This document shows, piece by piece, positions 23,653-56,443 of a stretch of DNA of 64,000 nt. Made by a program: the position numbers and the translations under genes. Source of the stretch: Neoechinorhynchus agilis. Its lineage: Eukaryota > Animalia > Acanthocephala. Each line of letters starts with the position of its first letter. The first letter of the stretch is position 1. The notes below the pieces were generated by a model. It saw only the letters and a list, made by a program, of their open reading frames with translations. It did no database searches and was not told the origin of the DNA. The stretch is from contig CM121342.1 of NCBI GenBank assembly GCA_051530055.1, forward strand, positions 16,135,480 to 16,199,479. Direction: 5' to 3'.

Positions 23653-25524
23653 TCACTTAGAGTTTACATGAGTCCTCATGCAATATCCTTTAAGCTTCAA
23701 AACCGGACATTCGCTATCGGAAAACAAACAAATTCTCTTTCTTACATTGCACTTATCTGAAATAGAAACAAGATTCGCCTTGAGATCAAAGTAGCCACTT
23801 TGCTTAATAATACTTTTAATTCCACCAGAAGACTTCGTCATGATAAGTAAATCTTTTTTATCCATATGCTTGTAGATATCAGCCAGTGATAATGTTTCGT
23901 TGTCAATCACCAAACGTACTACTTTCCTTAGCAAACCTTCGGTATCTTCGAGTTTTACATGATTCTGAGAGCTTCGTTTTTTGTCGGTGAACATTTGATC
24001 GCTCATAGATCCACCGTACTTTAGGTATATGCTCCGAATATCGTCTCCGGATCTTGCGTGGTCATTAACTAATCCTATAATACACTTAGCTCGTGTTGAA
24101 GGAATACGAAGTTTATCTATCAAAACGCGAAATCCTAGGTCATCACTCATTTTCTTCAAAATTGCTAAATAACGCTCATATACAGACGAAACGTTTTTTG
24201 TCTCTTCTAAACTTGAAAAATCACATGACTTGAATTTTCCGTGAAATCCGTATGGACAGCAAGGGATTATTTAGAAGATTTTTTAGAAAAATTCTCAAAA
24301 ATCTTTTAATTAAGATAAAATTGCTTTTATTGCTAGCGGCAATCAGCGGCACCCATGGAGTTAACTCGTCGCCATGATTGTTTATTAAGAAATCGAATTC
24401 TTTAAATTGATTCCAAGAGTCCCAATTGTGCAGGCATAACTGAATCTCTCTTAAATCACAATCTGATCCAAATAAATCCCATATTCTTCGTTTTCGCATA
24501 TCTATGCCGGTTCCAATGAAACCGCATTCCTTAAGTAGATACACCAAAAGTCCGTTTCCACAACCAATGTCCAAAAACCGTAGGGGTAGCGAATGCTGAG
24601 ACCATAAACTAATCAGGTAAGCTGCGATGTTCAAGTCTTCGTGAATAAACTTTGATGAGTCTGTAGATTCAGTCCAGTTTTTCTTTAGGTGAGTAGAATG
24701 GAGTTCTTTAATAAGGAAATCTGATCATTAAATGTTGGGAAATTAAATATGATAGGTTCACGTGAACAAAAATCTAAAGTGCTTTGATATAATTCCAGAC
24801 AAGTCTCGTAAATTATTTTATTGAGCATGAAGTTCAACATTTCAACAACAAGAATGGTTTTTAAATTCAGACGTAAGACTAAAATTTAGAAATGTAAGGG
24901 TTTTGTAAAAAAATTAAGCATCTAAAAGTTGTTGAGTTTTGGGTATAACTCGATGCTGATGAAGATTTGTTTTTGTACTTACAAAAGGATCCGAAAACAC
25001 TGCCTAAAAGCAGACCAGATTATTCGCCTTCGGTTGTACGTATCGTAGTAGAATTGTATATCAATATGCTTGAGGGTGCTTATGTCCGTTGAGCAATTCT
25101 CAATCGAAGACCAATTGCAGATCTTTCGAAACAACACATTCTGTATCCAACCATTGGGTTCCTCTTCAAAAAGGCAGGCAATTCTTCTACTTTCATCAAA
25201 TTTAAACCGATAGGCGGTTTTAATCGAAATCGATTCTTGACTGCAATTTGTTTCAGTTTCGCATTTTTGCGGAACGAAAGTGTATTGATTACAGTCAATG
25301 TACACTAACTCACTTGAACTCATTACACCCCATTTGTTAGAACGGTATAGAAGTTTTCTTTGGACTTGGTATGTGTCCGTTTCGTTTAAAAGTTCACCAA
25401 TAACACAAGCGAATAATCTTCGGTTTATAACCTGAGGCTTTTTGATGTAGATCATGCATGCAGCTCGAAAATCGGACTGACTGCAGTGCACTGGAATTGT
25501 TGTTGTGCATTTCCAATCAATCAT
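23653..25524 (-). CDS. TRMT44: tRNA (uracil-O2'-)-methyltransferase TRMT44; three segments separated by two non-GT-AG inserts
   Basis: KPQVINRRL, KFIHED, FLDIGCGNGLLVYLL, GIDMRKRRIW, NHGDELTPW, PCC, C-terminal C/H cluster. Segments 25524-25030, 24718(or 24712)-24310 and 24266-23653 join into an open frame of about 503-505 aa. Confidence 0.85.
24267..24309 (-). other. 43-nt hairpin insert in TRMT44 CDS (candidate non-canonical intron)
   Basis: 18-bp inverted repeat (16/18) with a 3-nt loop and TTAA/ATAA flanking repeat. Removal restores FILIPCC. No GT or GC donor. Confidence 0.75.
24719..25029 (-). other. About 311-317 nt insert in TRMT44 CDS with imperfect terminal inverted repeat (candidate non-canonical intron)
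   Basis: Ends AAGG..AATCTGGTC / GATCAGATTTCCTT. In-frame removal gives YNR(FL)IKELHSTHLKKNW. The strong GTAAGT donor inside is out of phase with the CAG acceptor. Confidence 0.6.
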
Positions 25525-25789
25525 AAGATATCTGCATAAAATAGAATAAAGGAAGAAAATAATTCCGAAGTTTTAATCTGATTTGCCTTTAAAGGCGTGA
25601 TATTGATCATTATCCAAAACTGACAGCAAATTTTCTCTTAATAATCGCTAAAATCATTCAATGTGAGGCTGAAAGGACTCTGTAATATTTAGGGTATGAA
25701 TAGGAAACCGTAAATGATTGGCTATAGTAAACGTCTACTCTATATCTTAAGCATTCGACTCGGTAGGCCATTCATTACTCCTTCAAGCC

Positions 25790-26825
25790 TTTTCGATTTC
25801 GGTCAAAACGCATGACAGATCATCTGTCTACCCCTTCTCGATTACCCTATCCTTTACAAAAGGTGTACCTCAAGGTGCGATCCCTTCACCACTTGTTTTT
25901 AATATTTTCTTAAACGACCTCAAACCTCTCTCCTCTCTAAACTCTTCTAATACGCCGACGATATCACCCTCATGACCCATTCACCAACCACCTCTCCCTC
26001 TCCTTAACCTCTAAAGAAATCACACACAAAAGATTTCTGCACCAATCACAAACTCTACCTAAACTTCTTTAAATGCTTCGAAATGATTCCCTCATTTTCC
26101 CGCAACACCACATCATACCCTGAGCTTCTAAATGACATTCTACGAGTCACATCCCTAAGAATTCTGGGTATCCAATTTCAACCAAACTTGAAATGGCACT
26201 GGTACATCACTCTCTTCCTCAAGCACAGCACTTTTGAAATTTATCTACTCAAACGCCTCTGACATTTAGGAATACCTTTACCCGATCTCTACAAATTTTG
26301 CTTATGCTTTATTTTATCCCCCGCATCTACGGTTATCCCATCCTTTGCTACCTATCCAAATCCGTCGTCTTGAAATTCTTCATAAAAGAGCATCTAAAAT
26401 TTGTACAATTGACTTCCCACTCTCTCCGAATACCTTGATGCTATTTTCATAAAACAAACCAAACGCATCTCAACTCTATCACCACAATTTCTACCGCATA
26501 TCGCCTCTTTTCACACGAGCACAACACTCGTAATTCCAATTCGTTTCATCATCTCTCGATCTCGCACCTCCCTATACCTACGCTCCTTTCTCCATGCTGC
26601 CCAATCTTGTCGGATATCATGATTAGAAGTGAACATGAGGAAATACCCAACCTCACAAACTCTCCTACAAACCAAATCCACTAATTCCCATCCGATTGAA
26701 TCCGTAATCCACTCCAAAATCAATAACCACATTCATTTTACTAATCAAAACCAGAATGTTTATAAGGACCCAAAGGTATATGCGTCTCATTCTTTTTGGA
26801 TTAGGAAATGAACGTGTTATTATTA
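25790..26825 (+). mobile_element. 5'-truncated CR1/L2-group LINE copy
   Basis: Highly similar to 22000-23100 (shared stretches CCTAAGAATTCTGGGTATCCAATTT and TTGAAATGGCACTGG); ends with AACGTGTTATTATT. Confidence 0.85.
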
Positions 26826-27708
26826 ATTCATCTACTTCTCAAATTTAAATATAGGTCAAAATACTTCTATTTGTTAATCATAAATTCAACGCTTGCTAGG
26901 CTGTAAGGAGACTCCTTATTTAATAAGTTTAGTCTTTAGCAAATTTCGGATCGATATTCCATGAATTCACATAGAACATTCTGATACTACATAGAATTCA
27001 CTTATATTAAAAAGTCTAGAATTGAGCTAAGCTCATGATAGCAGAAGGTAGCGACAAAAATCCATTTGAATACATGGAGGAAATATTTGTCTTTGTGTCA
27101 ATTGAACTCCAGGGGTTTTAGTATTTCACTCGCGGTAGAATATCAATTTCTGGTGCCGTCCAGCTTCGATTTAATCGATATTCTGCAATCAATTTCAGCA
27201 TCATTTTGAGTGAAACAACGAGGAACAGATCGAAATGCGGTTAGGAAGATCTTTGAACGCGAGTTCATTCGTGTAGTTCATTGCGGAAGAGTAGAAACGG
27301 GTGACTCTATGAGGTAAAAGAACCCGTTCGATCTGGATGTACGATTAGAATTCTTTTCCTATTGGAGTCTTCACTACTAAGGGACGCACCTAACTGCTTT
27401 GATCGATCGTAGATGGCGCAGCATCTCCAACTGAGTTGTTACAATACGACACCCAAAAGTCTGACCAAAATCCCAGTTATTCGAAGCTTCGACGAATGCA
27501 CGTCTCCTCGTGATACAGATCTTCTCCCATTGACATCTTTGCGATACTGTGCTTGTGGGCGTATCAAGCAATTCCTCAAGAAGACTGACGTCTCTGAAAG
27601 TATTTACCCAATTCTGATAAGTATTCGGTTAGGACGAGTGGTCACCGCATCTCTGTTGTCCTGCGACTGCATTCCTCCTTCCAACAGCAAGGATTCCCAT
27701 CATAAGAA

Positions 27709-30700
27709 ATGGCATACCTGATGTATCTATCAACGGGGTTTATACTCGCGATTTGTTCAATCAGTTAGGCACCCTTGAAACAAATCATGAAGATCTCGCT
27801 TCTTTGTAGGCCCTAGCAGCGATCTGTGCAACCAATTCCACGAAAACTGCGAATCGTGCATTTCAGGAGGCGGCCCGTTATGTGCTTGGTGCACTACTCC
27901 AGTGGTGAGGGAACTTCTGCGACTTTTAGTCGAATTTCCGTTTAGATTGAAGCGAATGCTAGTTTTAGTCGATGCGGCAGACATGACTTGATGAAAACTC
28001 ACTGCAAAAGCGATCGACTGGTCTACTCGAGAAGCAGTGTCGAACCAACTAAGGTTCGGCGATCGTTATTAAAATAAAAAACATAAAGTTCGCACTCGCT
28101 TCAAATAGATTGAACATTCACTAATGTCAGCAGCGATTGAAAGCGATCCAACCAACGTCGTTATTAAAATTAGACCAAGTAAGTTGTTAGTCGACTGTCT
28201 TAAGCCTGATCAAATAATTTTCGGGTTTTTCGAAACTCATTTGCATTATGAAATTGAATAAACGTTTTCCGATGCACAATGCCGTAAAAAACCTACCTCT
28301 TTGAGAATTTTAATTATAGTAATTCTCCACTGTCGCGGAGTGAATACGAAAATTATTAGTTTAATTTTTCCCATTAGCTCATCATCTCTTCTGTGAAAAA
28401 TTCGAAGGTCGAAATTCAACGCAAATTTACTTTTAGGCTGACCAACGAAGTTCGCCAGGGTACTTATCATCAGTCGTTTCTCAAGCATATTTTTGGAATT
28501 AAATACAGGGTATCCCAAAAAATGTATACACACTTTAAATAATTGTAAATTTAAGGTTTATTATAATTTGAATAATTTTCAACGTGTAAAAAATTATAAA
28601 AATACCATTCTATTGTCTTGTTATCGCATTTTCTCAAACTGTCAGGTCCCCAATAGATGCAATTGTGCTTGTTAATCGAAACATTTTTTCGGATATCCTG
28701 TATATAGTCCATTCGGTGTTATAATATTTTTAACAATAATATTACAATAGTATTTAAAATGCGCACTGTATCGCTTTGATAGCCCTTATCCACATCCACG
28801 GAGATAGCAAATGTAAACTTTTTCTATTGTTGAATATTATTGATCGAAGGGAACAATCGTATCCATTCTCATATTGTTTTCGAAAAAATCGTATTTAAAA
28901 TCGTTTTGCGAAGCTGTGTTTATTTTTCAACAGGGAAATTCGAGTTTCTGTTTAGCGCCCAGAATTTATTATTCATATAATTTAGGAGAATCCTAACCTG
29001 TTTTTTAAAACTATGTTAACATTTTTGTAAAATTATAATATTGTTGAAAATACTCCCGGTGCGAAAAAGCTACATAACATTATTATTTCTCACTACTTTA
29101 ACAATGACTGATGAGGCGAGGTTACCTCGCGAAATATCTCCAATAAATCAAATATGCTATTACCGGGAGTATTTTCACCAATATCGATGATTTTGTAAAA
29201 CATTGAAATTAAAAATCTCGTTCTTAAGCGGCTTGCGGTTTCCCGTTGAGCCCACAAAGTACAACGACAATGCGGATGTCAAGGAATAATCCCTAGATGA
29301 AATCCGTTCTCATACTAATTTATCCACCTGCCGCTCTTCACTTTAAAGAAACTTAAAACCTTTTAGACGACCCTGTGAAATTTAATGTGAGCTTCAAACA
29401 GGTTTCGGATTACCCGGTCGACCTTTATTTTTTAATGGATTTATCCAATTCTATGGTGGATGATAAGCATAGGCTGAGTCAGCTGGTTAAGCAACTAGGT
29501 ATGCCGCAAATCCATTTTCACTCACAAATATATTGTGAAAGCCACCAAAATGCGGAATATTACGTCGGACTTCAGATTGGGATTCGGAAGCTACGTGGAG
29601 AAACCTATAATGCCATTTGTAAGTATAGGTACCACTAATAGGTAATTTAAGATAAAAGTATTATGATTTGCTACATTTATGCCTGTCATAGATCTCATAA
29701 GTCGTGTGCGCTCCAAAATCAGAATGGAAACATTACAACTACATGTATACCAGCGTATAGTTTCAAACACCATCTTAGCCTGACAAATGACTCTGAGGAA
29801 TTCGCAGTGAGTTTTATGATTTAGTTTTGTTAATGTGATAGTGTCATATAGTCTAAAATTGTAGAATTGACTCACGTTTCACTAATTTTTTGTCAAAAAG
29901 TAGTAGTAGAATGTGCATATAACTCCATTGAAAGCCCTTTTCCTTCGGTATTTCGTCATGTATTATCTAGTCTCAAGTGGAAAAAACAAAGGTTTCCCGG
30001 AATATTGATGAACCTGAAGGCGGTCTAGATGCGCTAATGCAGGTCATTGTTTGCGAGGTGAGTTTATAGTGACATTAAAGATACATTATTTCATAATGGA
30101 AAGAAAATAATTGGCTGGCGACCGAACTCCAGAAGATTAATAGTCTTTTCAACAGACGCCGGTCTGCACTTTGCAGGAGACGGAAAGGCGCGTATTTAAC
30201 TTATTTCAGACTGGATAATATTCTTTTTTTTAACAGTTGGCTGGGATAATTGAACCAAACGATGAGAAATGCCACTTATCCCGAGTTTACGACCAATCAT
30301 TTGGTAGATTTGTCTACGAATATACCGAGTCAACGCGGCAGGTCAATTGGATCTTAGTACACTTTTTTATACACTGAAAAATTCTAGGATTATCCATCAT
30401 TTGGGCAAATCTATGCAAAATTGATGGAGTACAATGTCAATATTATTTTTGCGGTCACTTCGCGTCAAGTCCCTCTGTACACGGAAATCGCGAATTTTCT
30501 TGAAGCGGCTGTAGTCGGCGAATTGGACGATGACTCAAGCAACATTGTGGACTTGGTGGCAATGAATTATAAGGTATGTTGACGGGTATGTATGCTTTGA
30601 TCATAAAAGCATTAAGAAAATCACTAATCGAATGAGATTGATGTTCAAGGCATCTGGGGATGCGAAGGTTGTCAAAGAAGGCAAAGTGTTTTTAGTTGGA

Positions 30701-33119: not shown

Positions 33120-33138
33120 ATGCAATTTTCTTTTGAAT

Positions 33139-34887
33139 TTAAACCTCACACTCATCATCCGCATCGTTTCCAGGATCATTTGATTCTTCGAGCACCATCG
33201 TAAGACAATTGGGGTCAGGTATCTTTTCGCCAACGACTTCCAATGCGACCTTTGTGTAATATTCATCTATACTCTGATAATCGCCAGCACAACCCGCTTG
33301 ACTGGTTTGTGAGATTTCTGAAGGATTTCGAGAGTGGTTAGCTTTTATCATGAGATTTGATTGATACATTGAAGATGTTACCTCTGCACTGGCATTTCGG
33401 GTGTGCTTTGCGAGAAGCATGGGTCGACCAAGAACACGATTCTTCGTGGCACCTTCTTCGCCGTTTTCATTCGTCCGCTCACTAGATTTGATCGAATTCA
33501 ATCGGAGAACACCAAAACTGTCAGAGAGATTGCGAATATGGCGATTAGATGATGAGTCCTCCAATGACATATCCAAATAAGCGCTCACCGAACTATTCGT
33601 TGAGTACTCATTATCATTGGTTGATTCCTCGATTCTTGCTACTTTCACATAAGCGATAGGCGGCGTTTAGGTCAACCAGCAAATAATTTATGCTGGGAGC
33701 AAAACCCATAGTTTTAAACTACAATTATTGCTGTCAGAATTATGACTGAACTAAAGTACAAATGTTCAAAAAAGATTTCATTTCGATCCGAAAAAGCAGA
33801 ATAATCATTGAAACATTTTTGAACAATGGTCTTAAGTTACCATTGAATGACTATACTTCAAAACAATTGGTAAAGGGTTTCGCAAACTCTAACTAATTTA
33901 GATGGGTGTCTTATCCGATATCGAAATACGGAATGTCGTTATTTGCACCTTCATTTTTAGCACTGCTCTCCGCAATGTCCTGAAATAAGATGGACCATTT
34001 GATATCTCTACAGAATCGCCACACTTTTTAAGAGCAAATGAACCTTTGCCACCTACCGCTTCTTTTTACGTGCTCAGAAATCCGTTTATATATAAGTTCT
34101 GCTCCGCTATAATCTAGAATCCCAACGGCTGCAACAAGAGCTCTAACATTGGTGCATTTCCCAAGAGCCTTTCGATTGAGGGCAAAAGCGCAGCATATTC
34201 GCTGTTCTTCGCAATATTCAAAAATTCTATTTATGATGTCGTCAAGACCGCCCTCGGCGTTAGTTGGTTCACAGTCAGGAGCAATTATCACCAGTCTGAC
34301 TTGCTTAGCCTTTAAGCGCTTAAGAATCTGACGAAGGCCAACAATATATCTTCGATGATATAGAGGTAAAGTTGATATATGTCACACCCAGCAATCATCT
34401 TCACCTCTCTCTATCGAGCTTTAATCTTATTCTTTGCGTATGCTCTTGATTGAAAATCAACGAGCAGTTTCAGTAAAAGACAGCAATCTTCATCGAGCTC
34501 GTGGGATCGTCTATTTCTACAATATTCCCGGTAAACAGCTAGGTCGGATTTTCTAGGCTTCTCAATCTCTTCTTCATTATCGATTGTTGCTTTCCAGTCG
34601 ATTTGACTTCTCTCTGATCTATCCGTACGTTCCTTCAAAATAATTTTCTTCAATGTGGATTGCTTCTTTTTTGCTGGACGCTCGGGAGGTCGTTCCTTTC
34701 CCCGCCGTATAATGATGGGTTCCGGTGTCTTTGTTTGCGGTTTCGGTTGGTCTTGCTTCTTTTGCACGGAGCGAGATGAATTGATAATCCGGGAAGACAA
34801 GTTTAATAAAATTGGTTGCTCTATTCTCTGGCGGAATGTTAGACGTTTGTTGTCAGAAGAAGGCGAATGATGTTTTGCCTTGCTCAT
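33139..34887 (-). CDS. SECISBP2L: SECIS-binding protein 2-like (SBP2/SBP2L) with L7Ae domain
   Basis: KKKQSTLKKIILKER, LLKLLVDFQSRAY, RRYIVGLRQILK, VIIAPDCE, ALNRKALGK, VGILDYSGA and C-terminal HSRNPS motif. Two GT-AG introns plus one non-canonical 53-nt insert. Confidence 0.85.
34360..34412 (-). other. 53-nt inverted-repeat insert in SECISBP2L CDS (candidate AG..AT intron)
   Basis: AGAGGTGAAGATGAT vs reverse complement AGAGGTAAAGTTGAT (13/15); ATA repeated at both junctions; in-frame TAG at the 5' junction. Removal gives KIKARYHRRYIVGLRQ. Confidence 0.8.
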
Positions 34888-35734
34888 ATTAGCACAATCT
34901 TTTGGGATGACTTAAATCTGAAAAGGAAAGATTCTGAAGCGATAATGCGTACTCGGAAGTGACCAATTTTTAAGCAACTGATCACAAAAATCAGCTTTCC
35001 AACGAAGGTTAAACTATAAGAACGAGGAAATAAAGTACAGAAAGCAAATCTACAACGCATATTCAGCGCACGTTGTATCCAATCAGAATAAAAGGGCATT
35101 CGCAAGGCAGCCAATCAGAATTAAAATTCGTCGGTGCTTTTGATTAGTCATAATATGATAATATTATTCGAGATTGAGCATGAAATAATTTAAATTATGT
35201 ATGCAATAAGCCAGAAACTAGCTTTTAATTCGACAACAATGGCACAGCGTTTCAAAGTTAACAAAATCGCGTTATAGGTCCAAGCGTAAAGTTGAAGAGC
35301 ACCGGAAAAACGCAAGTGTACGAGAGAAGACTATTTTGGGACAATAGAGTTAAAGTTATGATGATCATAACCGCCGTATAAAAATATTTCGAAAAAGAAA
35401 GCCACGTTGTATCGTCAATTACGATAACCACATTTCCAATAAAAAGAACGGTTGGAGAATAAGTTACAAGAAATTACTCACAATCTACTTTCTTTCGAAG
35501 TACAACATGAGACTTAAAAGGCACATTTGCTTTTTACGTTTCAGACTAGGCGTTTGCGTTCAAAGGTCGCGATTTAATTTCCCATTTCTCAGATTATCAC
35601 GACGAACTTGAGGAGCGGACGAATAAATCGGTTTTTTATAAAATGCGAAAATGTATTTTTGAATCCGACGGGGTTGTAAAATTAAGAAAAGGAAAGTGAA
35701 GTTCCAAGACTTTCTGGTGGCAGTTGAAGAATGG

Positions 35735-38721: not shown

Positions 38722-41700
38722 ATGAATGGGAATCTTCACTCAGATGAAATTAGTGAAGATGAGTCGACCAAAGATATCTCCATTGAAGGAGATCAGCTTT
38801 TGTCTCTTCTTTCTTCAAGTACATCACAACAAGTGAAGACCCTGGCCAGTAATTTTGTAGAACGAGCTGTACAGTTGGCATACGATAAGCATGGGCAAAG
38901 ATTCTTTGACTTAATAAAGAATCTCTGACTTTAACCGGCATGCCGTGAAGGAATGTCAAAACCGAAAGAGGGAAATTGAAGAGTTAAGTCAAGTGATAAG
39001 CCAAATGAAGAAAAGCATGCAAAATGAGTTGGGTTCTGGCGAGCAACGAGAAGCCATGTTGGTGATTGAAGGCGAACAAAGGGAGTTTGCCTCAAGGCAG
39101 TTAATCGCCCGTCTCGAAATGGACAACAGAAATCTTAAGGCTGAGTCGAAACAGCTCAAATCTAAGCTTAATGAGTACGAAGTGTCATTTGATCAATACG
39201 AAGCAGAAAAACGGGTCAATTCAATGAATATTAAGAAGCTTACGTCTGAATTGAACGATCTCAAGCCAAGGTACGTGCGGCTCGAGGAGGACAATTTCAA
39301 GCTAGAAGATAAGAACGTGAAACTCGAGAAACTTGCGGCGAAGTTGAGAAAAGAAATGTTGAAGATGGACGAAGTTCTAATGGAAAATGAACAGGCGAAG
39401 GAAAGAATAGGAGACCTTCGTACTCAAATTGAACACATTACAAGTCTTAAGGAAATTGCCCAGCAACAGTTCGAGGAAGTACTTCAAAACTTAAAGCATG
39501 AGCGCCAGATAAAATATCAGCTTAAGCGAGAGTTAGGCACCAAAACTCAAAAGGTAGGTCTCAGTTTTAAGTGTTTTTCAAATGATGAAACAGTTCATGG
39601 GAATTGCTATAGAGTCAACATTAAATATAAAGCGATTAGCACAACCACACTTACACATTTTTTAATGAACAACCTTTTATCAAGAAATTTCATTTGTTCC
39701 TAACGACGTTTTCTAGCTTTCTATATGTTGAAAAAACTTCACGAATTTGAAATCTGAGCGACTTTTCTAATACAAAGAGCGCCAAAGCTGGTTTGATTAA
39801 CTGCTCATGGGCATTCATTTTCTGCATCATTGGGTCAATTCGCCTTTTCTTAAAGCTACCTTTTGTTGTTTGCAGGAGTCTATGGCAATATTGGCTAACA
39901 TAGCCGACAGTTTGGCAACATCAGCAACAACGACAATCGAAGATGTTCATCAGATATCAGGGGACATGTTTGATCCCTGCGAAATGATTGTTGATATTCA
40001 TCAAAACGTGGACGAGGTCGACGAAGACGAATCCATCGACCCTAAACACGAACATGATACAGAACCGCCTTCTCTGCTCAGTGAATTGAATCAGGCTGAA
40101 ATGAATCAACTTCGACACGAGTGCTCCCGCGCCAAAAGCGAAAATGACCAGCTTTCCCACCAATTAAATGTCAATCAATGTATTTTGATGAAGTGCTCTG
40201 ATCATTTTGAAGATTGTATGAGGCGCTTGGGTGCCGTATCGAAGATAATCTTGAACATTAATGATGATCCAAATGAAAACAAAAGTATACGTGAAGATGG
40301 GAAATCGGTTGAGACTATGATGGAGCGGCACTTGTCGGTGGTGCGCATTCTCGAAGAGGCTATATGCGCCCCTAAATCTTGCGTCTCGGATGAAGATGTA
40401 AATCGGCTGAAATTAGAAGCATCGAATATTCAAAAACAATTGGACGAGATTATTTGCGAAAATTCTCAATACAAAGTCTGTTTGGAATCTGCGATGAGTG
40501 AAATTGAACAGATAAGTGGCCAAATGAGTATTGAAGATGTTTTACATTTTGGAGAAGACGAGAGTGAAGACAATGAAAATTATGTATCCAATGTAAGTGG
40601 ATGTGAGATTCTTTGCCAGAAGTTTAAAGACAAACTTCATTCGATATTTCAATCGGTAGATAATGCTGAGCTACGAGGACCGGCGGGAGGAGATCAAACA
40701 AGCGATGTTAATGATTGCGCAAAGTTGAGGTCAATTTTATCTGGAAAGCGAGAGCAGATAGCAGCCTTAAAGACTGTATTGGAAGCGAACAAAAGAACTG
40801 CTGAAATTGCTTTGGCCAACCTGAAGAGCAAGCACGTAGAGTATAAAACCTCGTTAATATTAAAACCTGAAATATTGCAACTTCGACTCGACAACTACTA
40901 TTTCGTTTTCCTCCTGCGTTTTTTAGATTTTACGAAGTTTCCTAAGAAAGCAAACTACGAGGAAATTCAAAAATTGGATACTGAGTTATTAAAAGAATAT
41001 ATTCAGATTACTTATAAGTAGTCTTTTATCTATATTAATTTCGGAAGCATTTCTGTATTTAATTGACCAAACGATCAATTATAATTTTTTTACTTGTTAA
41101 GTATAAATCACAACAATGCAATTTTTTAACAAAAGTTAAGAAACTTTTGAGATCTAGAATTTTTATTTGTTCCTGAAGATCCTAAAGATTTCGTTTTTCG
41201 TCTCTATACCTCAAAATGGTGCATTATTGGAATTTATTCAATAATTAAATTATGCGCAAATTTTTAAAAATCGTTAATTTATTATATGAATAAAAATAAC
41301 TTATTAACCAATTTTTTAAATCCTTAGAGAATATTTTGAAAGTTCTCAATTAAGTAAAAGTATGCGATTATAAAGTTAATTTCATTATTCCAGAAAGTCT
41401 CTGAAAATTAGTTTAAATACTAACTTGAAATTAAATGAATCAAAGCGTCTAAAATTCCATGTATCATCTTCCAGGATATAAGGTTGTCTTTTAACTCAAA
41501 AAGGTTGCCGTTTGAATAACTGTAATATTTAATCGGATTTTCATGCAATAGAGGGCTGCTTTCTAATACTTTTAAAGTCATTTTTGACATACAAGATACC
41601 TCTAGTGCTCCACAGAACACCTTGATACCCTTTGTCAGCTATATATTGAGCGATAATACTTTTTCGTGCATTTTAAAAGGACTCCCATTATTTTTAGTAA

Positions 41701-42040
41701 CCTTTCGATTTTGACGAGGTTTCATACCACAAACGATCGACTGGCTGTTCAAGAATCCATGAAGAAATTGTTGTTGGAATTGAAAACTCTACGAGAAGAG
41801 GTTGTCACCTTTGCATCCCTCCGTGCAATGTTTTCCGCTCGCTGTGATGAATATGTTAATGAGATCGATGATTTAAGGCAACAATTATCAGTTGCTCAAG
41901 AGGAAAACAAGACACTTAACTCTCTACTGCGTATGGCAATTCAACAAAAACTATCCCTTACTCAACGCTTGGAACTAATTGAGCTCCAAGAAGTTGATTC
42001 CAGCAGCGGAAGCAAGATTTTTTACCAACAACGACGATAG
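38722..42040 (+). CDS. BICD: Bicaudal-D dynein adaptor
   Basis: Coiled coils; C-terminal REQIAALKTVLEANKRTAEIALANLKSK and FASLRAMFSARCDEY...NKTLNSLLRMAIQQKLSLTQRLE. One clear GT-AG intron (about 39554-39875) and two inverted-repeat inserts. Confidence 0.9.
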
Positions 42041-48224: not shown

Positions 48225-48314
48225 GTATAATTTTGGTGAAAATACTCCCGGTAATAGTATATTTGATTTATTGGAAATATACTATTACCGGGAGTATTTT
48301 CACCAAAATTATAC
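48225..48314. repeat. Perfect 40-bp hairpin derived from the foldback family
   Basis: 48225-48264 is the exact reverse complement of 48275-48314; 10-nt loop. Confidence 0.9.
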
Positions 48315-49762: not shown

Positions 49763-50922
49763 TTACTTCTGTTCGTGTTCTGCATTCTTTTTTGCGTTAA
49801 TAATGTCGAAATCAGGGATTATCCTCAATTCGCTTTCATCTTTTGGAACGATCCAACTCTCGTATCCCGCATCCAAAGCGTCAGGAAAATCGGATTCTAA
49901 AAGCGGAATGAAATCTTTTGTTTCCACTGTTGGAATCTCAATCTTTGAGCGTGCTCGTCTGACCAAGCGCTTGTCTTCTCCTTTGTATTTGTGGACAAAT
50001 TCACATTCGCTTCCTTTTTCACAGCGACCAAAATCAGAAAACGCCTGACAGTTCTGATATGGCCTAATCAAACTCTTATGGTGACCATACATGCAGTTAG
50101 GATTGGTGCATTTGCAAGAAGATATTGAATAAACACAAGTGGGAATTCGCTCCAAGTCCAATGAATGCTCCAGTGTACATCCGGAACATTCCCTGTTGTT
50201 CAAAAATCTCGGACACAGCCGAACACTCGATTTGTCGTGCTGGTACTTGCATCTACTGAACGAACAAACATCCACAAAAAATGACAGTACACGACTTTTT
50301 CAATCTTACGTTAAGAGAATCAAGAAAATAAATTAAATCTTTCCAATGTAACGAAAAAAAAATTCGTCTGAAAAAGTTTATCGGTTTTCCGTTCAACAAA
50401 GAGCAGATTATGTGGCAAAGAATAAAAAGATTCAATCCTAATTATTCTGTTGAATTTTATTTGGAAAATTCAAGATACTGCATTTTAATTGAATGCACCA
50501 ACGAAAATTCAGCTTACGTAATTGGCCGCAGTAAGCCAATCAGGATTCAGGAATTTCAATTACACAAAAAAGATCATTTGGTGTACTGATGTTTTTGTCG
50601 ATGTATAATTCGTTCTTCGACAACCGTTTACGCAGCATCCACGTCTAATGAACATTTGGCAATTAATTGTTTTCCGTCTGATTTTATAGCGCTGGTGAAT
50701 ACCCGATGAAGGCGCGCCGCAGTCGTACAGGCTGCTCGCCGAGCGCTTCAAGCTCTCCCGCTGCTTGTTATTGTTCAATGAAGCGATCGCAGACTTGGAA
50801 GTGCGGTCAATTTTGTACCGAGATATTTGCCCATCTCTACTATACGTGTTCAAGCAAAATCGATGTTCGGATCGATCACGAAAGTGAGTTTGGTGAAAGG
50901 ATGGCTGAAATCGATATGTCAT
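49763..50922 (-). CDS. ZC3H3-like tandem CCCH zinc-finger protein (264 aa), split by a non-canonical insert
   Basis: After removing 50253-50617 the first finger reads C-QMFIRRGC-C-VNGCR-C-KYQ-H followed by DKSSVRLCPRFL, as in ZC3H3-type arrays. Confidence 0.72.
50253..50617 (-). other. 365-nt TIR-bearing insert inside a CCCH finger (candidate AA..AG intron)
   Basis: About 35-bp TIR GAACGAATTATACATCGACAAAAACATCAGTACAC vs GAACGAACAAACATCCACAAAAATGACAGTACAC; degenerate flanking repeat TGTCGAA/AGTAGAT. Confidence 0.75.
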
Positions 50923-51359
50923 CTACAAAAATTGATACGATCTAAAACGCAATCCCATTCAAGTAAACGCGATAAAAGCGTTGCGAGGGATACATATTTG
51001 AATGCATGTATGTTTCTTCCGTATATAAACACGGAAGAATTGTGGAAAACTGCGTTTGTTTTTGCGCTTGTTTTTATATTTGTTTAGGGTGTTGATTCTA
51101 TCGTTGTAAATATTGATTTTCCCCGGCTGGAATCGATTTTCTACTGGGGATTACAAAGTACGAGGGACCTACACTTTCGATCGCACCTTTAGCGGACGCA
51201 TAGATGGTCCTACAATTTTATTTGCATGTGACGGTGGGGAAAAATTATATATATTTAAATATTTCGTCGAATTGTACTGGACTTCTTTAGTCAAGTATCT
51301 AATATTCCAGTAGATACTGCTATAGCTTTCGATCACTGAACCAAATTTTCGAACTTCCC

Positions 51360-52370: not shown

Positions 52371-52416
52371 GTGCCACCGCCGACGACATGATGCCGCCTC
52401 CACCACCGACGACATC

Positions 52417-52990
52417 GATGCCCCCGAAACTACTTTATAAACTGCGCACAGCTTTCTTCTTCAAGCACGTCGATAAGTTAAAGAAGCTCGATGACATTGT
52501 GAAGGCGTGTCTCGAGCACTTTTTAAATATCCAGCTATCAGACGAGGCCTGGTGACAAGCTTCATCGCCTTTATCGTCCGGTGGCTTGGGTATTGTGTCG
52601 GGATCTGGTAAAACCTATATTGAGACCCATGTTCTGTTTAGCGGACGAATTTCTAGTTGCGGTCCAGGAATGGTGGGAGAAGACGGGTTACAACCAAGTT
52701 CCCGTGAATGGCCTAAAGCAGTCTATCTGGGATAAGCTTTTAGTCGCCCGAGCTCATAGTTAGGTCTCACGTTTTTGCACCCTTTGGAGTAGAGACTCTT
52801 AGTGCGCTCGGTAGCTCGGCACTTAGATTTACGAAGGAGTTATCGAGTAGACTCCAGGCCAAGACAGGAAATACAAGAGGTGGTGCCTTCGAACGCCAAA
52901 ACATTGGTCTCGCGATCCAGAGAGGAAACGCAGCGAGTGTGGTTGCGACCACTGAGGGGAGAGCGACGCCTCTTCTTCGTGGACGGTGGT
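52417..52990 (+). mobile_element. Internally deleted, degenerate CRE-clade fragment
   Basis: PKLLYKLRTA..., FLNIQLSDEAW*QAS..GGLG, VPVNGLKQSIWDKLLVA and degenerate GVET..LGSSAL. Confidence 0.75.
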
Positions 52991-53121
52991 GATTGTTTAA
53001 ACATTTTTTGTTGTTGTGTGTAACAAAAAGTGTAATAAAATAAACTCCCGCAATATTAAAAAAATTTTGTTTGGTATAAATTTTTCCCCACCGTCACATA
53101 CTCATGGAATTTATCTTCAAT

Positions 53122-53465
53122 TTTATTTGTTCTTTGGTGATTGAGAAAATAGAGATGAACGGACGAAATATTGATAATTAATATAGAATTAATCATATCG
53201 AGAAAATCCATCGGGACGGTAAATTTTTACTTGTGGTGAAGATAATCCGGGTTAAAAGTCATTTTATTGTTCTGAAATATTTCGAAAGAGGAAACCTCGC
53301 CTTATCAATAATTGCTTGTAAGTTTTAAAATGTGTAAAAAATTTACAAGCAATGATTGATAATGCGAGGTTTTAGAGCAATAAAATGATTTTTAACCGGG
53401 ATTATCTTCACCAAAATTCATAATACAGAATTTGTCTCTATTTTCTCAATCACCAAAGAAATAAA
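53122..53465. repeat. Foldback element (about 340 bp) with variant hammerhead cores
   Basis: Outer arms TTCTTTGGTGATTGAGAAAATAGAGA / TCTCTATTTTCTCAATCACCAAAGAA; the minus strand carries TTGATAA-G-GCGAGG...GAAATATTT. Confidence 0.8.
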
Positions 53466-53500
53466 TCATCGCCGGAGGAAATCCTTCGGGTTAATCAAAG

Positions 53501-53789
53501 TATACTTTTGGTGAAAATAATCCCGGTCATAACATGTTTGATTTATTTGAAATATTTCGCGGGGTAACCTCGTCTCCTCTGTCATCTAAAAATAGGTTTT
53601 ACACATTATGGTGGTTCGAGCGGATAATTGGTCGCCGTACTTCGGGTTCGGCGATCCCGCGCACTCGAGCATAAAACTTAATGTGTAAAACTTATTTTTA
53701 GATGACTGAGGAGGCGAAATTACCTCCTCGTGAAATATTTCCAATAAATCAAATATGTTATGACCGGGATTATTTTCAACAAAAGTATA
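53501..53789. repeat. Second adjacent foldback element with decayed hammerhead cores in both arms
   Basis: TATACTTTTGGTGAAAATAATCCCGGTCATAACAT pairs with ATGTTATGACCGGGATTATTTTCAACAAAAGTATA; CTGAGGA...GAAATATTTC at 53706. Confidence 0.82.
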
Positions 53790-53825
53790 AATAAATGAAC
53801 AACTTTTCTACAATATTATTGCTTT

Positions 53826-54075
53826 GCTGATTTCTTGGGTAGACAGCCCACTGATATCTTGGATCAGGCAGAAAATCACACCTAATCTCAATGAACCATA
53901 CTCCGTGATGAGTTTGTAAGCATTCCTTCGGATCCAAGGCGGATGAGGCTTATCTGTGTAAGTTTCCTCCTGCCTTCACCTTTATTTCGTCCCCTTTAAT
54001 TGTGAATCATCTGCGATCTCGTGGATTTTGAACTTTTTGACCCACTTAAACAAGGATTCGAGACTGCTAGTTTCA
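53826..54075 (+). repeat. Dispersed repeat copy A, upstream of ADI
   Basis: Colinear similarity to 56670-56900 (CTTGGG..GCCCACTGAT, AAATCACAC.TAAT, AGTTTGTA, ATCTGTG..AGTTTCCTCC, ATTTCGT.CCC). Confidence 0.6.
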
Positions 54076-54407
54076 TGTGTATGTTTTATATGGCGGTGCG
54101 ATATATTTCGGAACTAAAATACATGGCTGATTGTATTAATGGCTTTTTTTCTAATTAAAGCAATTTAAATTTTATTCTGATTTCTTTTGGAATGATCGCT
54201 TGATGTATTATTGATTCCTTTTTGTTACGCGTCTCTTGCTGTAATCAGCTTTTTCAAAAAGGCACGAGTGTTTCCCTGTTTTTTTCCGAAGAATGACTTC
54301 GGCACCAGAAAAAACGTCTATGAAATGGAGAAAGCGAAAAATCGATAATGGTATTGCGCTTGTGCTGACTTCATTACTATGAAGTCGAGTTTGGATCCAC
54401 TAAAGAA

Positions 54408-56443
54408 ATGGAAAAGCGTTTGTGTATTACAGACGAAATCAGCAGGGTGCGATCTGTGCTTATTCATGCACCTGATGATGGGTACTTGAGAATATTCCCT
54501 GCTCATAGTCAAGATTGGATGCTTAAGGATATTGTGGATGTTACTGATCTAAGAAAAGACGAATATGAACACTTTATAAAAGTCCTCTTGGCTTTTGTGG
54601 ATTTGCCAACGCTGATGGCGATGGAGAAACAGCCAAAAGATCAGATTTCAGTAACTAATCCAAACGATCCTAAATATTTCAGGTCAGATCGAATCCTTGA
54701 TTTTCAATGGCTCCTCTCGGACGTACTTGAGGATCATAGAGTTCGAATGTGTCTCTTAAGTGCGGTTTGCGCCTTAGAGCGACCGAGATCGATTGTACAA
54801 CTTTTCTAGCTCATGGATTTGAATCAAAATTGATCTTCAAAAACCCAAGCCTAAGGATAGATTAATTGAAGTGGTGATAATCGTTTTTGTTTTTTGACAC
54901 GTTAGTAGAAATCGATCACAGTCGCCTAGAAGAAACAGTATCTAATGAGGTTAACGAAGAATTGCTAAAATTCCCGAGTCGAATACTGTCTAATATTCTA
55001 ATCACTGGATCTATGCCGAATAGTCCTCGTCTTCTTTTTCACCCAATCCCAAACTTAATGATGGCCCGCGATTCATTAGTCGTCGTCAAAGATCATTTAA
55101 TTCTCGCAAACTCCTTCAATCCTGTGAGACGTAGGGAGAACACTCTTGTCCGCTATATCGTCTACAATCACCCGATATTCGCTTGGAATAAGGAAAAAGT
55201 GATTGATTTGTTCACTGTTGGACATGCGCTGATGATCGGCGCTAAAAAGCGAAGATCGTGTGACATTACGGTCGAAGGTTCCGATTTGATGCTACTCACT
55301 CCAGATCACCTATTGATTGGTGTTGGTATTAGAACGAGTCTTGCTGGCGCTGTTGCTTTGAAGGAAATCTTACGGTTGCACTTATTTCCACTGAATTTCT
55401 TATACACAACAAGGATTAATCATCAAGACTAAATCCATCAAGATAATAATATTGGAGATTGTTGGATAGAAATATGTTTTATCCGTGAGGGTTGGAGGAT
55501 TATGATCACCACACTTCTCCAGCTAATAAGGAAGATCATCATCAAAAGAGGAAATCCTTCGAAATGAAGGAGTTAGAGATGTGTGGTGATCATAATCCTT
55601 TTCCAGACCAATCTTTTTTACTGAGATATTCCGCGGGGAAGCCTCGCCTTAGTGGTCACTGTTTCACGAGTTTGTTGTGAGCGAAGAATCGATACTTTCA
55701 ATGCGGACATGTTCAAAACGGTCGCTAATAACTTCACATTCCTTTTTATTTGTGACCATTCGAGATATCTTTGCTTGGGTTCTAGGTCAAAATGTCGATT
55801 GTGGACATAATTGCAACCGATAATGGATAAGAAACGACTTGTATCCAAGGTAACCTTTTTGTATTTGCCAAGTGAAAAGTTCTGCACTCATTTGGACACA
55901 ATATTGGTCCAAATCAAACGTGACATGTGGGTTGTCCAAACAGAAGCATTCTATGAAGCATCGGTTATCGACTGTACAAAAGTTATCGATGATTGCCAGT
56001 GGCGTGATTGGAATAGAATAAGGCGGATTATACAGTACCAATTGGACATGCCTCTGAAGGCATTCAATAGTCTTAGAGAGTTCGTTGAAGACATAACAGT
56101 CAATGATTTTAAAATTGATCGACCACCGACTGTAGTTTTATGTGACCAGGGAGAGATAGAGGATTTGTGGAGGGAACAATGGTCGGACTCTAGTAACATT
56201 CTGACTTTAAAGGAAGGTGTAATTGTCATTTACGAATCACATACTAGCCTGATCAATCTGATGGTGAAGCACGGAATGAAGGTTATGAAATCCAGCGATT
56301 TTGTAGGAGACGTCGTAAATCACAGTTTGGATCCGGATCGATTAGAAAACACGGTTATAACTATTCCGTCCAGAGAATTAGTTAATGTCAGAGGAGGAAC
56401 GCACTGTCTAGTTCTTCCTTTGTGTCGGGATTCTTTAAGGTGA
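54408..56443 (+). CDS. arcA: Bacterial-type (Bacteroidota-like) arginine deiminase, 477 aa after removal of two TIR inserts; functional status unresolved
   Basis: DEISRVRSVLIHAPD, QDWML.DIV, PIPNLMMARD, VEGSD, IRT, THLDT, REQWSDSSN, RGGTHCLVLPL; catalytic D, E, H, D and C retained. Segments 54408-54778, 54931-55372 and 55823-56443 total 1434 nt with no internal stop. Confidence 0.85.
54779..54930 (+). other. 147-bp TIR element + 5-nt repeat in ADI CDS (candidate AG..AG intron in register 54778-54929)
   Basis: TIR GCGACCGAGATCGATT / AATCGATCACAGTCGC (14/16); flanks TTAGA/CTAGA. Removal gives CALEETVSNEV. Confidence 0.75.
55373..55822 (+). other. 447-bp TIR element + 3-nt repeat in ADI CDS (candidate AC..AT intron in register 55372-55821)
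   Basis: TIR CGGTTGCACTTATTTCCAC / GTGGACATAATTGCAACCG (17/19); flanks TTA/ATA. Removal gives LKEILMDKKRLVSKVT. Confidence 0.8.

What the first reader, a model, noticed from the sequence alone, without database searches (positions are those of the whole stretch)
24267..55822. Candidate system: inverted-repeat, non-GT-AG inserts in conserved genes that must be precisely removed (non-canonical introns or DNA-level excision)
SEEN: eight inserts (43, about 311, 53, 49, about 893, 365, 152 and 450 nt) break conserved motifs of TRMT44 (x2), SECISBP2L, BicD (x2), a ZC3H3-like gene and ADI (x2). Each has an inverted repeat, terminal in most cases. Six have a 3-7 nt flanking direct repeat, and each adds a frameshift or in-frame stop. 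Six lack convincing in-frame GT/GC-AG ends; the two BicD cases have possible canonical alternatives. The flanking segments show no other stops or frameshifts, although the TIRs (where counted, about 87-92% identical) and most direct repeats have already diverged. The TIR sequences are unrelated to each other. Every insert has at least one in-frame register ending in A-N (AT x5, AG x2, AC x1), and six of those registers start with A. KNOWN: Fritillaria borealis has MITE-derived AG/AN non-canonical introns; euglenids have hairpin-forming non-conventional introns; ciliates excise transposon-derived IESs from DNA. INFERENCE: five independent pseudogenes with otherwise pristine frames are unlikely, so this animal probably removes these inserts, possibly guided by terminal base-pairing, alongside normal U2 introns. 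Caveat: AT-rich direct repeats make A-containing registers likely by chance.
Basis: partly seen in the sequence, partly recalled or inferred. Interest (0 to 1): 0.93.

Follow-up and report, generated by a model that had tools for sequence, protein, structure and literature searches.

The report
Hairpin transposon inserts splitting worm genes
In a thorny-headed worm genome, four small hairpin-forming transposon remnants sit inside the coding sequence of three otherwise intact genes, so either the worm cuts them out of its RNA without normal splice signals, which is rare in animals, or the genes have recently died; public RNA data can decide.

Summary
The window comes from Neoechinorhynchus agilis (Acanthocephala), chromosome CM121342.1.

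Four form a solid core: TRMT44-a (43 nt), SECISBP2L (53 nt), ADI-1 (152 nt) and ADI-2 (450 nt). Each is flanked by TA on both sides and carries terminal inverted repeats (end-pairing z -3.3 to -5.2). Removing the element plus one TA restores a gap-free alignment to homologs. None has an acceptable in-frame GT/GC-AG pair.

Three others (both BicD inserts, TRMT44-b) have in-frame canonical GT-AG solutions and may be ordinary introns. The ZC3H3-like insert (365 nt) splits a CCCH zinc finger and remains unexplained.

Ordinary GT-AG introns (43-52 nt and 165-435 nt) are the norm in neighbouring genes. The published annotation truncates or splits every affected gene at its insert.

No N. agilis transcript data were reachable, so removal is not shown. 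My best reading is RNA-level removal of transposon-derived non-canonical introns (0.45), as in Fritillaria, Amoebophrya and Euglena. Recent gene death by transposon insertion is close behind (0.38). Public RNA-seq (PRJNA1223661) can settle this quickly.

The parts
23653..25524 (-). TRMT44 (tRNA Um44 methyltransferase) gene. Three open segments cover the full length of rotifer orthologs.
   Evidence: Pfam AdoMet_MTase, E 4e-27. tblastn of rotifer and other orthologs covers 91-92% of the protein. No stop or frameshift apart from the two inserts.
24268..24310 (-). Core insert TRMT44-a, 43 nt. It is a 41-nt palindromic element (24270-24310) plus one TA, and is flanked by TA at 24268-9 and 24311-2. 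It splits ...SNFIL|IPCC...
   Evidence: Hairpin -8.6 kcal/mol, z -2.3. End pairing z -3.3. No in-frame GT-AG, GC-AG or AT-AC pair. TA|..TA| register present. Gap-free join against 7 orthologs.
24710..25026 (-). TRMT44-b, 317 nt by ortholog alignment. Not a core insert: no inverted repeat of 10 nt or more, and an in-frame canonical intron GT(24998)-AG(24721), 278 nt, is available at the cost of 13 extra residues.
34031..34887 (-). SECISBP2/SECISBP2L-like gene: an N-terminal exon and the L7Ae RNA-binding exon. The annotated model stops inside the insert, and the L7Ae exon is not annotated.
   Evidence: Pfam Ribosomal_L7Ae, E 1e-13. Match to PDB 7zjw_B SECISBP2, E 4e-32. Gene calls.
34361..34413 (-). 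Core insert SECISBP2L, 53 nt. Flanked by TA, with terminal inverted repeat AGAGGTGAAG / CTTTACCTCT. It splits ...KIKAR|YHRRYIVGLRQ...
   Evidence: Hairpin -20.5 kcal/mol, z -3.1. End pairing z -3.9. Gap-free against human SECISBP2 across the join. No GT/GC-AG pair.
38722..42040 (+). BicD gene. The annotated model (619 aa) skips 38833-38950 and then reads through into the 893-nt insert, so it loses the conserved C-terminal coiled-coil exon (41747-42037).
38893..38941 (+). BicD-49 (direct repeat GCATG). Not a core insert: an in-frame canonical 46-nt intron, GT(38874)-AG(38919), gives almost the same protein (+1 aa).
40854..41746 (+). BicD-893. The exact-length join is KSKHVEYKTS|VQESM. Not a core insert: canonical GT(40841)-AG(41718) adds 5 aa. 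A 25-nt inverted repeat (80%) lies at 40841-40865 / 41703-41727.
49763..50922 (-). ZC3H3-like CCCH zinc-finger gene. The annotated model covers only the last 109 aa.
50258..50622 (-). ZC3H3 insert, 365 nt, splitting CCCH finger 1. It has a subterminal inverted repeat (50604-50581 / 50292-50268). It has no TA flanks. The only canonical option puts 20 aa into the finger. Unexplained.
54408..56443 (+). Arginine-deiminase-family gene with bacterial (Bacteroidota-like) affinity, shared with Pomphorhynchus laevis. It is annotated as two separate genes, with the middle exon missing.
54780..54931 (+). Core insert ADI-1, 152 nt. The element 54777-54926 is flanked by TA at 54775-6 and 54927-8. Inverted repeat GAGCGACCGAGATCGATT / AATCGATCACAGTCGCC.
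   Evidence: Inverted repeat of 16 nt, 88%. End pairing z -5.0. The site is uninterrupted in P. laevis. The only canonical option is a poor GC-AG adding 4 aa.
55373..55822 (+). Core insert ADI-2, 450 nt. The element 55373-55820 is flanked by TA at 55371-2 and 55821-2, with a 19-nt inverted repeat (89%). It contains a nested TA-flanked 90-nt hairpin element at 55503-55592.
   Evidence: z -5.2; no GT/GC-AG. The site is uninterrupted in P. laevis.

Best explanation
The four core inserts are small non-autonomous DNA transposons of the TA-target type (Tc1/mariner- or Stowaway-like MITEs, or their remnants). They landed in coding exons of TRMT44, SECISBP2L and ADI in the N. agilis lineage. I propose they now behave as non-canonical introns.

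Proposed mechanism: in the pre-mRNA the terminal inverted repeats fold into a hairpin. The hairpin places the two exon ends, each next to a TA, within 0 to 3 nt of the base of the helix. The element and one TA copy are then removed, which restores the reading frame.

What is shown: the insert anatomy; the exact restoration of homolog-colinear proteins; the lack of usable GT-AG ends; the empty orthologous ADI sites in P. laevis; and the coexistence with many ordinary GT-AG introns.

What is inferred: that removal happens at all; that it happens in RNA; and which machinery does it. That machinery could be a spliceosome with relaxed splice-site demands, as in Fritillaria, or a structure-guided non-spliceosomal route, as suspected in Euglena.
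For: 1. Removing each core insert gives gap-free alignments through strongly conserved motifs.
2. About 4.4 kb of coding sequence in the three genes has no other stop or frameshift. ADI carries two independent elements plus a nested one, and still has no small lesion.
3. End pairing is strong in the core inserts (z -3.3 to -5.2) and absent in six short canonical introns (z -0.2 to +1.2).
4. The two shortest core inserts (43 and 53 nt) fall in or next to the size class of the genome's short introns (43-52 nt).
5. The four elements have unrelated inverted repeats and no second copy in the window. That argues against one recent burst.
6. No intact paralog of BicD, TRMT44 or ADI appears among annotated N. 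agilis proteins.
7. The published BUSCO completeness is higher for the transcriptome (54.9% metazoan, 71.0% eukaryotic) than for the genome (47.1%, 58.4%), despite 96% k-mer completeness.
8. The same anatomy (end inverted repeats plus short direct repeats, no GT-AG) is proven to be spliced in Amoebophrya. Related cases exist in Fritillaria and Euglena.
Against: - No transcript evidence is available.
- The three core genes are all plausibly dispensable in a parasite reported to lack about 40% of metazoan core genes.
- Neighbouring conserved genes (SLC6 transporter, integrin beta, HGS, DJ-1, POU) have no solid insert of this kind.
- The TA duplications are perfect, so the insertions may be recent.
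- N. agilis ADI has lost 46 of 123 near-invariant residues, against 16-20 in two other acanthocephalan sequences. That fits relaxed constraint.
- No common boundary motif was found. Neither the Fritillaria nor the Euglena rule fits.
- TA-flanked inverted-repeat elements are common in the window's non-coding DNA, so hits in genes could be plain insertional damage.
- The window is TE-rich and lies within about 250 kb of the chromosome end.
Confidence: 0.45

Rival explanations
1. Recent gene death. TA-targeting MITEs inserted into the exons of three dispensable genes (possibly four, with ZC3H3) in a genome undergoing reduction. The genes are young unitary pseudogenes that have not yet gathered other lesions. 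The BicD and TRMT44-b interruptions are ordinary introns.
For: The TA duplications are perfect. The same type of element is frequent in non-coding DNA of the window. The affected genes are non-essential types. ADI shows an excess loss of near-invariant residues, keeping 77 of 123 against 103 and 107. The region is TE-rich and lies within about 250 kb of the chromosome end. The source paper reports heavy gene loss.
Against: About 4.4 kb of coding sequence has no nonsense or small frameshift lesion, while there are four or five transposon hits. ADI alone has two plus a nested one. In neutral DNA, small lesions normally outnumber transposon hits. The four elements belong to unrelated, apparently low-copy families, so they are not one burst. 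Three such genes among about 12 host genes in one window would imply an implausibly high standing load of fresh pseudogenes in a 46-Mb genome that is 31.6% coding. For comparison, an old LTR element nearby (LTRs 85% identical) has thoroughly broken reading frames.
Confidence: 0.38
2. DNA-level excision. The inserts are germline-limited, TA-bounded, transposon-derived segments that are cut out precisely from somatic DNA, as ciliate IESs are. The assembly would then represent the unexcised form.
For: TA boundaries, inverted repeats, small size and exact frame restoration are the hallmarks of Paramecium IESs (the comparison rests on my own knowledge). The DNA came from pooled whole worms, which contain gonads and embryos.
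Against: Precise IES-type excision is not known in any animal. Whole-worm DNA should hold much somatic DNA, yet the consensus keeps all the inserts. The ends do not match the IES end consensus. No domesticated transposase evidence was examined.
Confidence: 0.05
3. Assembly or haplotype artefact. The inserts are mis-assembled, or they are rare insertion alleles that the hybrid assembler happened to pick.
For: The assembly is a hybrid ONT/HiFi/Illumina MaSuRCA assembly of pooled individuals.
Against: The TA duplications and terminal inverted repeats are the signatures of real transposition, not of assembler errors. Long neighbouring reading frames are clean (HGS 560 aa, BicD 404 aa). K-mer completeness is 96%.
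Confidence: 0.04

Closest known systems
Introner elements / non-canonical introns of Amoebophrya (parasitic dinoflagellate), PMC7789003
   Same: Inverted repeats of 8-20 nt at both intron ends form a hairpin. Short direct repeats overlap the exon/intron boundaries. There are no GT-AG ends and no single boundary dinucleotide. The elements are MITE-like and lack a transposase. The host is a parasite with a compact genome, and canonical introns coexist.
   Different: In Amoebophrya, removal is proven by RNA-seq and more than 60% of introns are non-canonical. Here removal is untested, canonical introns dominate, and the direct repeat is the dinucleotide TA. The host here is an animal.
MITE-derived AG/AC and AG/AT introns of Fritillaria borealis (larvacean tunicate), PMC13326754 and Henriet et al. 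2019
   Same: This is the only animal precedent. The introns are species-specific, transposon-derived and carry inverted repeats. They are spliced by a modified U2 system alongside a few GT-AG introns. The genome is compact and fast-evolving.
   Different: Fritillaria introns obey YAY|AG...YAY|. None of the core inserts can. In Fritillaria 95% of introns are non-canonical; here they are a minority.
Nonconventional introns of euglenids, PMC12501133 and PMC11282704
   Same: The intron ends base-pair and bring the exon ends together. TSD-like repeats sit at the junctions. Lengths are variable. A MITE origin is suspected, and the removal machinery is unknown.
   Different: The Euglena signature N3-CDG...CHG-N5-6|R is absent in every allowed register.
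Stowaway-type (Tc1/mariner-derived) MITE insertions that disrupt genes
   Same: TA target duplication, terminal inverted repeats, 40-450 nt, no coding capacity. Elements of the same type lie in nearby non-coding DNA.
   Different: Ordinary disruptive insertions come with decay of the host gene. Here the frames are otherwise intact, and one gene carries two elements plus a nested one.
Paramecium internal eliminated sequences (IESs)
   Same: TA-bounded, Tc1/mariner-derived, short, located inside coding sequence, and precisely removable (my own knowledge).
   Different: IESs are removed from DNA in a separate somatic nucleus. Nothing of the kind is known in animals, and the end consensus is not matched.

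Membership tests
U2-type GT-AG / GC-AG spliceosomal intron | GT or GC at the 5' end and AG at the 3' end, in a register that keeps the frame and a homolog-consistent length (four core inserts) | tested here: not met
   Exhaustive search within 90-120 nt of conserved anchors. TRMT44-a, SECISBP2L and ADI-2 have none. ADI-1 has only GCGACC...AG, which adds 4 aa.
U2-type GT-AG / GC-AG spliceosomal intron | The same feature, for BicD-49, BicD-893 and TRMT44-b | tested here: met
   In-frame pairs GT38874-AG38919 (46 nt), GT40841-AG41718 (878 nt, +5 aa) and GT24998-AG24721 (278 nt, +13 aa).
U12-type AT-AC intron | 5' /ATATCCTT (or /GTATCCTT) and a TCCTTAAC-like branch site | tested here: not met
   The in-frame AT...AC pairs found start ATAGAG, ATCGAT or ATTTCT. 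None carries the U12 5' motif.
Fritillaria-type non-canonical intron | Intron starts with AG, its last three bases are YAY, and YAY lies just upstream | tested here: not met
   Registers within 6 nt either side were tested. Only SECISBP2L can be written AG...YAY, and it lacks the upstream YAY. The other three core inserts cannot.
Euglenid nonconventional intron | Signature 5'-N3-CDG ... CHG-N5-6 | R(exon) | tested here: not met
   No register of any of the eight inserts fits.
Euglenid nonconventional intron | Base-pairing of the intron ends that juxtaposes the exon ends | tested here: met
   RNAduplex z of -3.3 to -5.2 for the four core inserts, against about 0 for short canonical introns. Folds.
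Amoebophrya-type introner element | 8-20 nt inverted repeats at both intron ends | tested here: met
   Inverted repeats of 16 nt (88%), 19 nt (89%), 16 of 18, and about 10 nt.
Amoebophrya-type introner element | 3-5 nt direct repeats overlapping the boundaries | tested here: inconclusive
   The exact repeats are TAAT, ATA and TA, and ADI-1 has none at the central register. All four share a TA|..TA| register.
Amoebophrya-type introner element | Absence of the insert from mature RNA | not testable with these tools
   No N. agilis transcript-derived proteins or contigs are in the collections. The reads exist as PRJNA1223661.
MITE of the TA-target (Tc1/mariner, Stowaway) type | Terminal inverted repeats plus a TA target-site duplication, small size, no ORF | tested here: met
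   The chance of 4 of 4 TA|..TA| registers is 2.8e-6.
MITE of the TA-target (Tc1/mariner, Stowaway) type | Multiple related copies in the genome | tested here: inconclusive
   No second copy of any insert lies in the 64-kb window. The rest of the genome could not be searched.
Ciliate-type IES (DNA excision) | Present in germline DNA and precisely absent from somatic DNA | not testable with these tools
   No genomic reads are available. Only the TA boundaries are met.
Unitary pseudogene | Disabling lesions other than the inserts (stops, small frameshifts) | tested here: not met
   None in TRMT44, the SECISBP2L exons or ADI.
Unitary pseudogene | Loss of residues that are near-invariant in the family | tested here: inconclusive
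   ADI keeps 77 of 123, against 103 and 107 in other acanthocephalan sequences. TRMT44 keeps 76 of 94, against 82-84 in rotifers, which is within the range of other animals.
Duplicate or processed pseudogene with an intact parent gene | An intact paralog elsewhere in the genome | tested here: not met
   The annotated N. agilis proteome is in the database (P0121). Even so, no second BicD, and no TRMT44 or ADI protein, of N. agilis was returned. Unannotated copies cannot be excluded.

The most novel reading that the evidence does not exclude
The four TA-bounded, inverted-repeat inserts are animal counterparts of ciliate IESs. On this reading they are germline-limited, Tc1/mariner-derived segments, and they are excised precisely from the DNA of the worm's somatic (partly giant, polyploid) nuclei to rebuild functional genes.
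Probability: 0.05. Interest if true: 0.95.

Novelty: new member of a known kind. Interest (0 to 1): 0.6.

Why it matters
If these inserts are removed from RNA, Acanthocephala would be the second animal lineage, and the first protostome, known to splice transposon-derived introns that lack GT-AG ends. The first is the tunicate Fritillaria. That would make three unrelated compact-genome or parasitic lineages (Fritillaria, Amoebophrya, acanthocephalans) with this kind of splicing. It would also offer a tractable case in which such introns are still a minority beside normal ones.

There is a practical consequence too. The published N. agilis annotation truncates or splits every affected gene. Part of the reported 'massive gene loss' in acanthocephalans, seen as missing BUSCO genes, could therefore be an annotation artefact.

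If the inserts are instead retained, the window documents gene loss in progress through MITE insertion. That is ordinary, but still useful for the reductive-evolution story.

Tried and rejected
1. Transcript evidence. Exact-protein look-ups for HGS and DJ-1 found only the genome record. Homolog searches with conceptual ADI, BicD and TRMT44 proteins returned no N. agilis transcript-derived protein. A look-up of the SECISBP2L N-terminal ORF found nothing. The paper's held supplement has no transcript tables.

2. Dating the insertions. I first read ADI-1 as having a diverged 8-bp target duplication (CCTTAGAG / CCT-AGAAG) and used it as a clock. The TA-flank analysis showed that the duplication is a perfect TA, so I dropped that argument.

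3. A common boundary motif. The Fritillaria and Euglena rules both fail.

4. U12-type AT-AC introns were rejected.

5. Translational bypassing (take-off and landing codons around a hairpin) was considered for the 43-53 nt inserts. I rejected it because the flanking codons do not match and the 152-450 nt inserts are far too long.

6. A one-base assembly error as the cause of the BicD N-terminal frameshift. This is disfavoured: the alignment to fly BicD is worse than with a 46- or 49-nt removal.

7. Repeat families. No second copy of any insert lies in the window.

8. Rfam search of the window found no hits.

9. A loose genome-style scan for TA-flanked inverted-repeat elements had a false-positive rate close to the signal (140 real hits against 103-121 in shuffles). 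Only its strict hits were used.

10. A possible ninth case in the SLC6 transporter (1662-1705) could not be separated from a 32-nt canonical intron.

Full report
**Origin of the window.** An exact-protein look-up of the intact 560-aa HGS gene places the window on NCBI assembly GCA_051530055.1, chromosome CM121342.1 (16.4 Mb), within about 250 kb of its end. The annotated BicD protein from the same record is named Neoechinorhynchus agilis, an acanthocephalan. The genome paper (PMC12690905) describes a 46.2-Mb hybrid long- and short-read assembly of pooled worms. It was annotated with BRAKER using RNA-seq from 74 worms. No paper in the searchable library links acanthocephalans or other Syndermata to non-canonical introns.

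**Checking the eight inserts.** I mapped each interruption against homologs.
- ADI: tblastn with 5 homologs and a 121-sequence alignment put the joins at CALE|ETVSNEV (152 or 155 nt removed) and ALKEIL|MDKK (450 or 453 nt). At most one residue of length difference remains.
- TRMT44-a: removing 43 nt gives SNFIL|IPCC, gap-free against seven orthologs.
- TRMT44-b: the ortholog-consistent removal is 317 nt, not about 311.
- SECISBP2L: removing 53 nt gives a gap-free alignment to human SECISBP2 residues 629-762.
- ZC3H3-like: removing 365 nt rebuilds the first CCCH finger as C-x8-C-x5-C-x3-H, gap-free against 10 of 11 homologs.
- BicD-49: with removal, the N-terminus is colinear with fly BicD (residues 11-255 against 10-257, 47.5 bits). 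With a one-base fix, only residues 80-272 align (41.0 bits).
- BicD-893: the exact-length join is KSKHVEYKTS|VQESM.

So the interruptions are real, and each breaks the frame or adds a stop.

**The eight are not one class.** An exhaustive search for in-frame GT-AG, GC-AG and AT-AC pairs near conserved anchors gave these results.
- TRMT44-a, SECISBP2L and ADI-2 have no GT-AG or GC-AG option; the in-frame AT...AC pairs in SECISBP2L and ADI-2 lack the U12 5' motif.
- ADI-1 has only a poor GC-AG that adds 4 aa.
- ZC3H3 has only an option that puts 20 aa into the zinc finger.
- BicD-49 has a 46-nt GT-AG intron that gives nearly the same protein.
- BicD-893 has a GT-AG that adds 5 aa.
- TRMT44-b has a 278-nt GT-AG that adds 13 aa, although it does so in a stretch whose length is invariant across animal orthologs.

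End pairing (RNAduplex against shuffles) separates the same groups.
- ADI-1 z -5.0, ADI-2 z -5.2, SECISBP2L z -3.9, TRMT44-a z -3.3.
- ZC3H3 and TRMT44-b, z about -2.
- The BicD inserts, not significant.
- Six short canonical introns of the neighbouring SLC6 gene, z -0.2 to +1.2.

**The core four are TA-flanked inverted-repeat elements.** Each of the four strong inserts can be written TA|element|TA within 3 nt of the homology-defined register. Removing the element plus one TA gives the homolog-consistent protein. This holds for 4 of 4 core inserts, 0 of 5 other candidates, 1 of 14 canonical introns and 4.1% of random segments. The chance of 4 of 4 is 2.8e-6. Together with terminal inverted repeats of 10-19 nt, this is the anatomy of Tc1/mariner- or Stowaway-type MITEs or their remnants.
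- ADI-2 contains a nested TA-flanked 90-nt hairpin element.
- Elements of the same type are common in the window's non-coding DNA.
- The four inverted-repeat sequences are unrelated to each other, and none has another copy in the window.
- In P. laevis the orthologous ADI gene is one continuous ORF across both sites. The ADI elements therefore most likely entered in the N. agilis lineage.

**Context.**
- Ordinary introns are the rule nearby. The SLC6 transporter has at least eight GT-AG introns (45, 46, 48, 51, 52, 198, 404 and 435 nt). Integrin beta has at least five GT-AG introns and one GC-AG intron, five of 43-50 nt and one of about 165 nt.
- The 43-nt and 53-nt core inserts fall in or next to this short-intron size class.
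- The BRAKER annotation breaks at every insert. ADI is split into two genes and its middle exon is missing. The SECISBP2L model stops in the insert, and its L7Ae exon is unannotated. ZC3H3 is reduced to 109 aa. BicD reads through into the 893-nt insert and loses its conserved C-terminal exon.
- From my own knowledge, BRAKER keeps only canonical intron hints. Its silence therefore says nothing about whether non-canonical junctions exist in the RNA-seq.

**Weighing the explanations.** Several points favour RNA-level removal.
- The only lesions in about 4.4 kb of coding sequence are four or five transposon-type inserts. ADI has two plus a nested one, and not a single stop or small frameshift.
- No intact paralogs appear in the annotated proteome.
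- The short inserts are intron-sized.
- The hairpin geometry puts both exon ends at the base of a helix.
- Transcriptome BUSCO completeness exceeds genome completeness.
- The same anatomy is proven to be spliced in Amoebophrya, and related cases exist in Fritillaria and Euglena.

Several points favour recent gene death.
- The TA duplications are perfect, so nothing dates the insertions.
- All three core genes are dispensable types, in a parasite with heavy gene loss.
- ADI has lost 46 of 123 near-invariant residues, against 16-20 in two other acanthocephalan sequences.
- The clearly conserved neighbours carry no solid insert of this kind.
- The region is TE-rich and subtelomeric.

I put RNA-level removal at 0.45, recent pseudogenes at 0.38, DNA-level (IES-like) excision at 0.05 and artefact at 0.04. 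The rest is unassigned.

**Comparison with known systems.** The closest structural match is the Amoebophrya introner class, with end inverted repeats of 8-20 nt, short boundary direct repeats and no fixed dinucleotides. The only animal precedent, Fritillaria, uses YAY|AG...YAY|, which the core inserts cannot satisfy. The Euglena signature is also absent. So this would work like those systems, but it is not a member of the Fritillaria or Euglena rule sets. If confirmed, it is a new member of the known kind 'transposon-derived non-canonical introns', in a new animal phylum.

**What remains unexplained.**
- The ZC3H3 insert splits a zinc finger. Its subterminal inverted-repeat element (337 nt) does not restore the frame, and it has no TA flanks.
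- I could not determine whether TRMT44-b and the BicD interruptions use the canonical or the homology-exact joins.
- The public RNA-seq and Trinity transcripts can answer all of these questions at once.

Noticed in passing
window 54408-56443; L003 6001-7736: Apart from a Pomphorhynchus laevis protein and one acanthocephalan-like transcript, the closest relatives of the arginine-deiminase-family gene are Bacteroidota proteins at 30-34% identity. This looks like an old bacterial-to-acanthocephalan gene transfer.
   Followed up: partly
window 54408-56443: N. agilis ADI keeps only 77 of 123 columns that are at least 95% identical in 118 homologs. P. laevis keeps 103. Changes include SERTS to GIRTS, EGGD to EGSD and DRN to ESH. 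The frame is nevertheless fully open. This suggests relaxed constraint or a change of function.
   Followed up: partly
window 1662-1705 (minus strand, SLC6 transporter, between the exons ending WAYG... and starting ...DDMYSMM): A possible further non-canonical 44-nt insert, with end pairing TTTGCTTAG / CAAGCAAA, would give an exact length match to human SERT. The canonical alternative is a 32-nt GT-AG intron that adds 4 aa. End pairing is not significant (z -0.6).
   Followed up: partly
window 38722-42040, 34031-35060, 49763-50922, 54379-56443: The deposited gene models are truncated or split at each insert. They include a BicD model that lacks its most conserved C-terminal coiled-coil exon. 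The paper's BUSCO completeness is higher for the transcriptome than for the genome. Part of the reported gene loss may be an annotation effect.
   Followed up: partly
window 29041-29181, 48228-48311, 53126-53791: A family of TA-flanked foldback or MITE elements shares the core GGTGAAAATACTCCCGG. Copies are 85-94% identical, and several are nested upstream of the ADI gene. All copies lie in non-coding DNA.
   Followed up: partly
window 57086-61917: An LTR retrotransposon with Ty3/gypsy-like gag-pol fragments. Its two LTRs are only 85% identical and its reading frames are broken many times. It serves as a local yardstick for what old neutral DNA looks like here.
   Followed up: no
window 21955-22863 and 25743-26690: Two copies of a reverse-transcriptase-bearing retroelement, 78% identical, flank the TRMT44 gene. 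Further fragments lie at 35.6-36.1 kb, 51.3-53.0 kb and 62.3-63.7 kb.
   Followed up: no
window 11398-11834 and 7471-7611: Long, nearly perfect TA-flanked inverted repeats (a foldback of about 437 nt and a 141-nt hairpin element) lie in intergenic DNA near the POU-domain gene.
   Followed up: no
window 30188-30236: The only in-frame solution for one integrin-beta intron is a GC-AG pair with an unusual donor (GCGCGT), 49 nt. It gives GDGK|LAGIIEPND, which matches my recollection of human GDGKLGGIVLPND (own knowledge, not fetched).
   Followed up: no
window 3005-3408 and 3710-4144 (SLC6 introns 2 and 1): Two long canonical GT-AG introns also show above-chance end pairing (z -3.0 and -2.0). They may be transposon-derived introns that do have normal splice sites.
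   Followed up: no
L003 about 7560-7620 (P. laevis ADI): The deposited P. laevis ADI model removes an in-frame stretch (MTVLCSADLLNDIKSG) as a GT-AG intron. A related transcript (P0002) keeps the homologous residues, so this is probably a false intron call.
   Followed up: no
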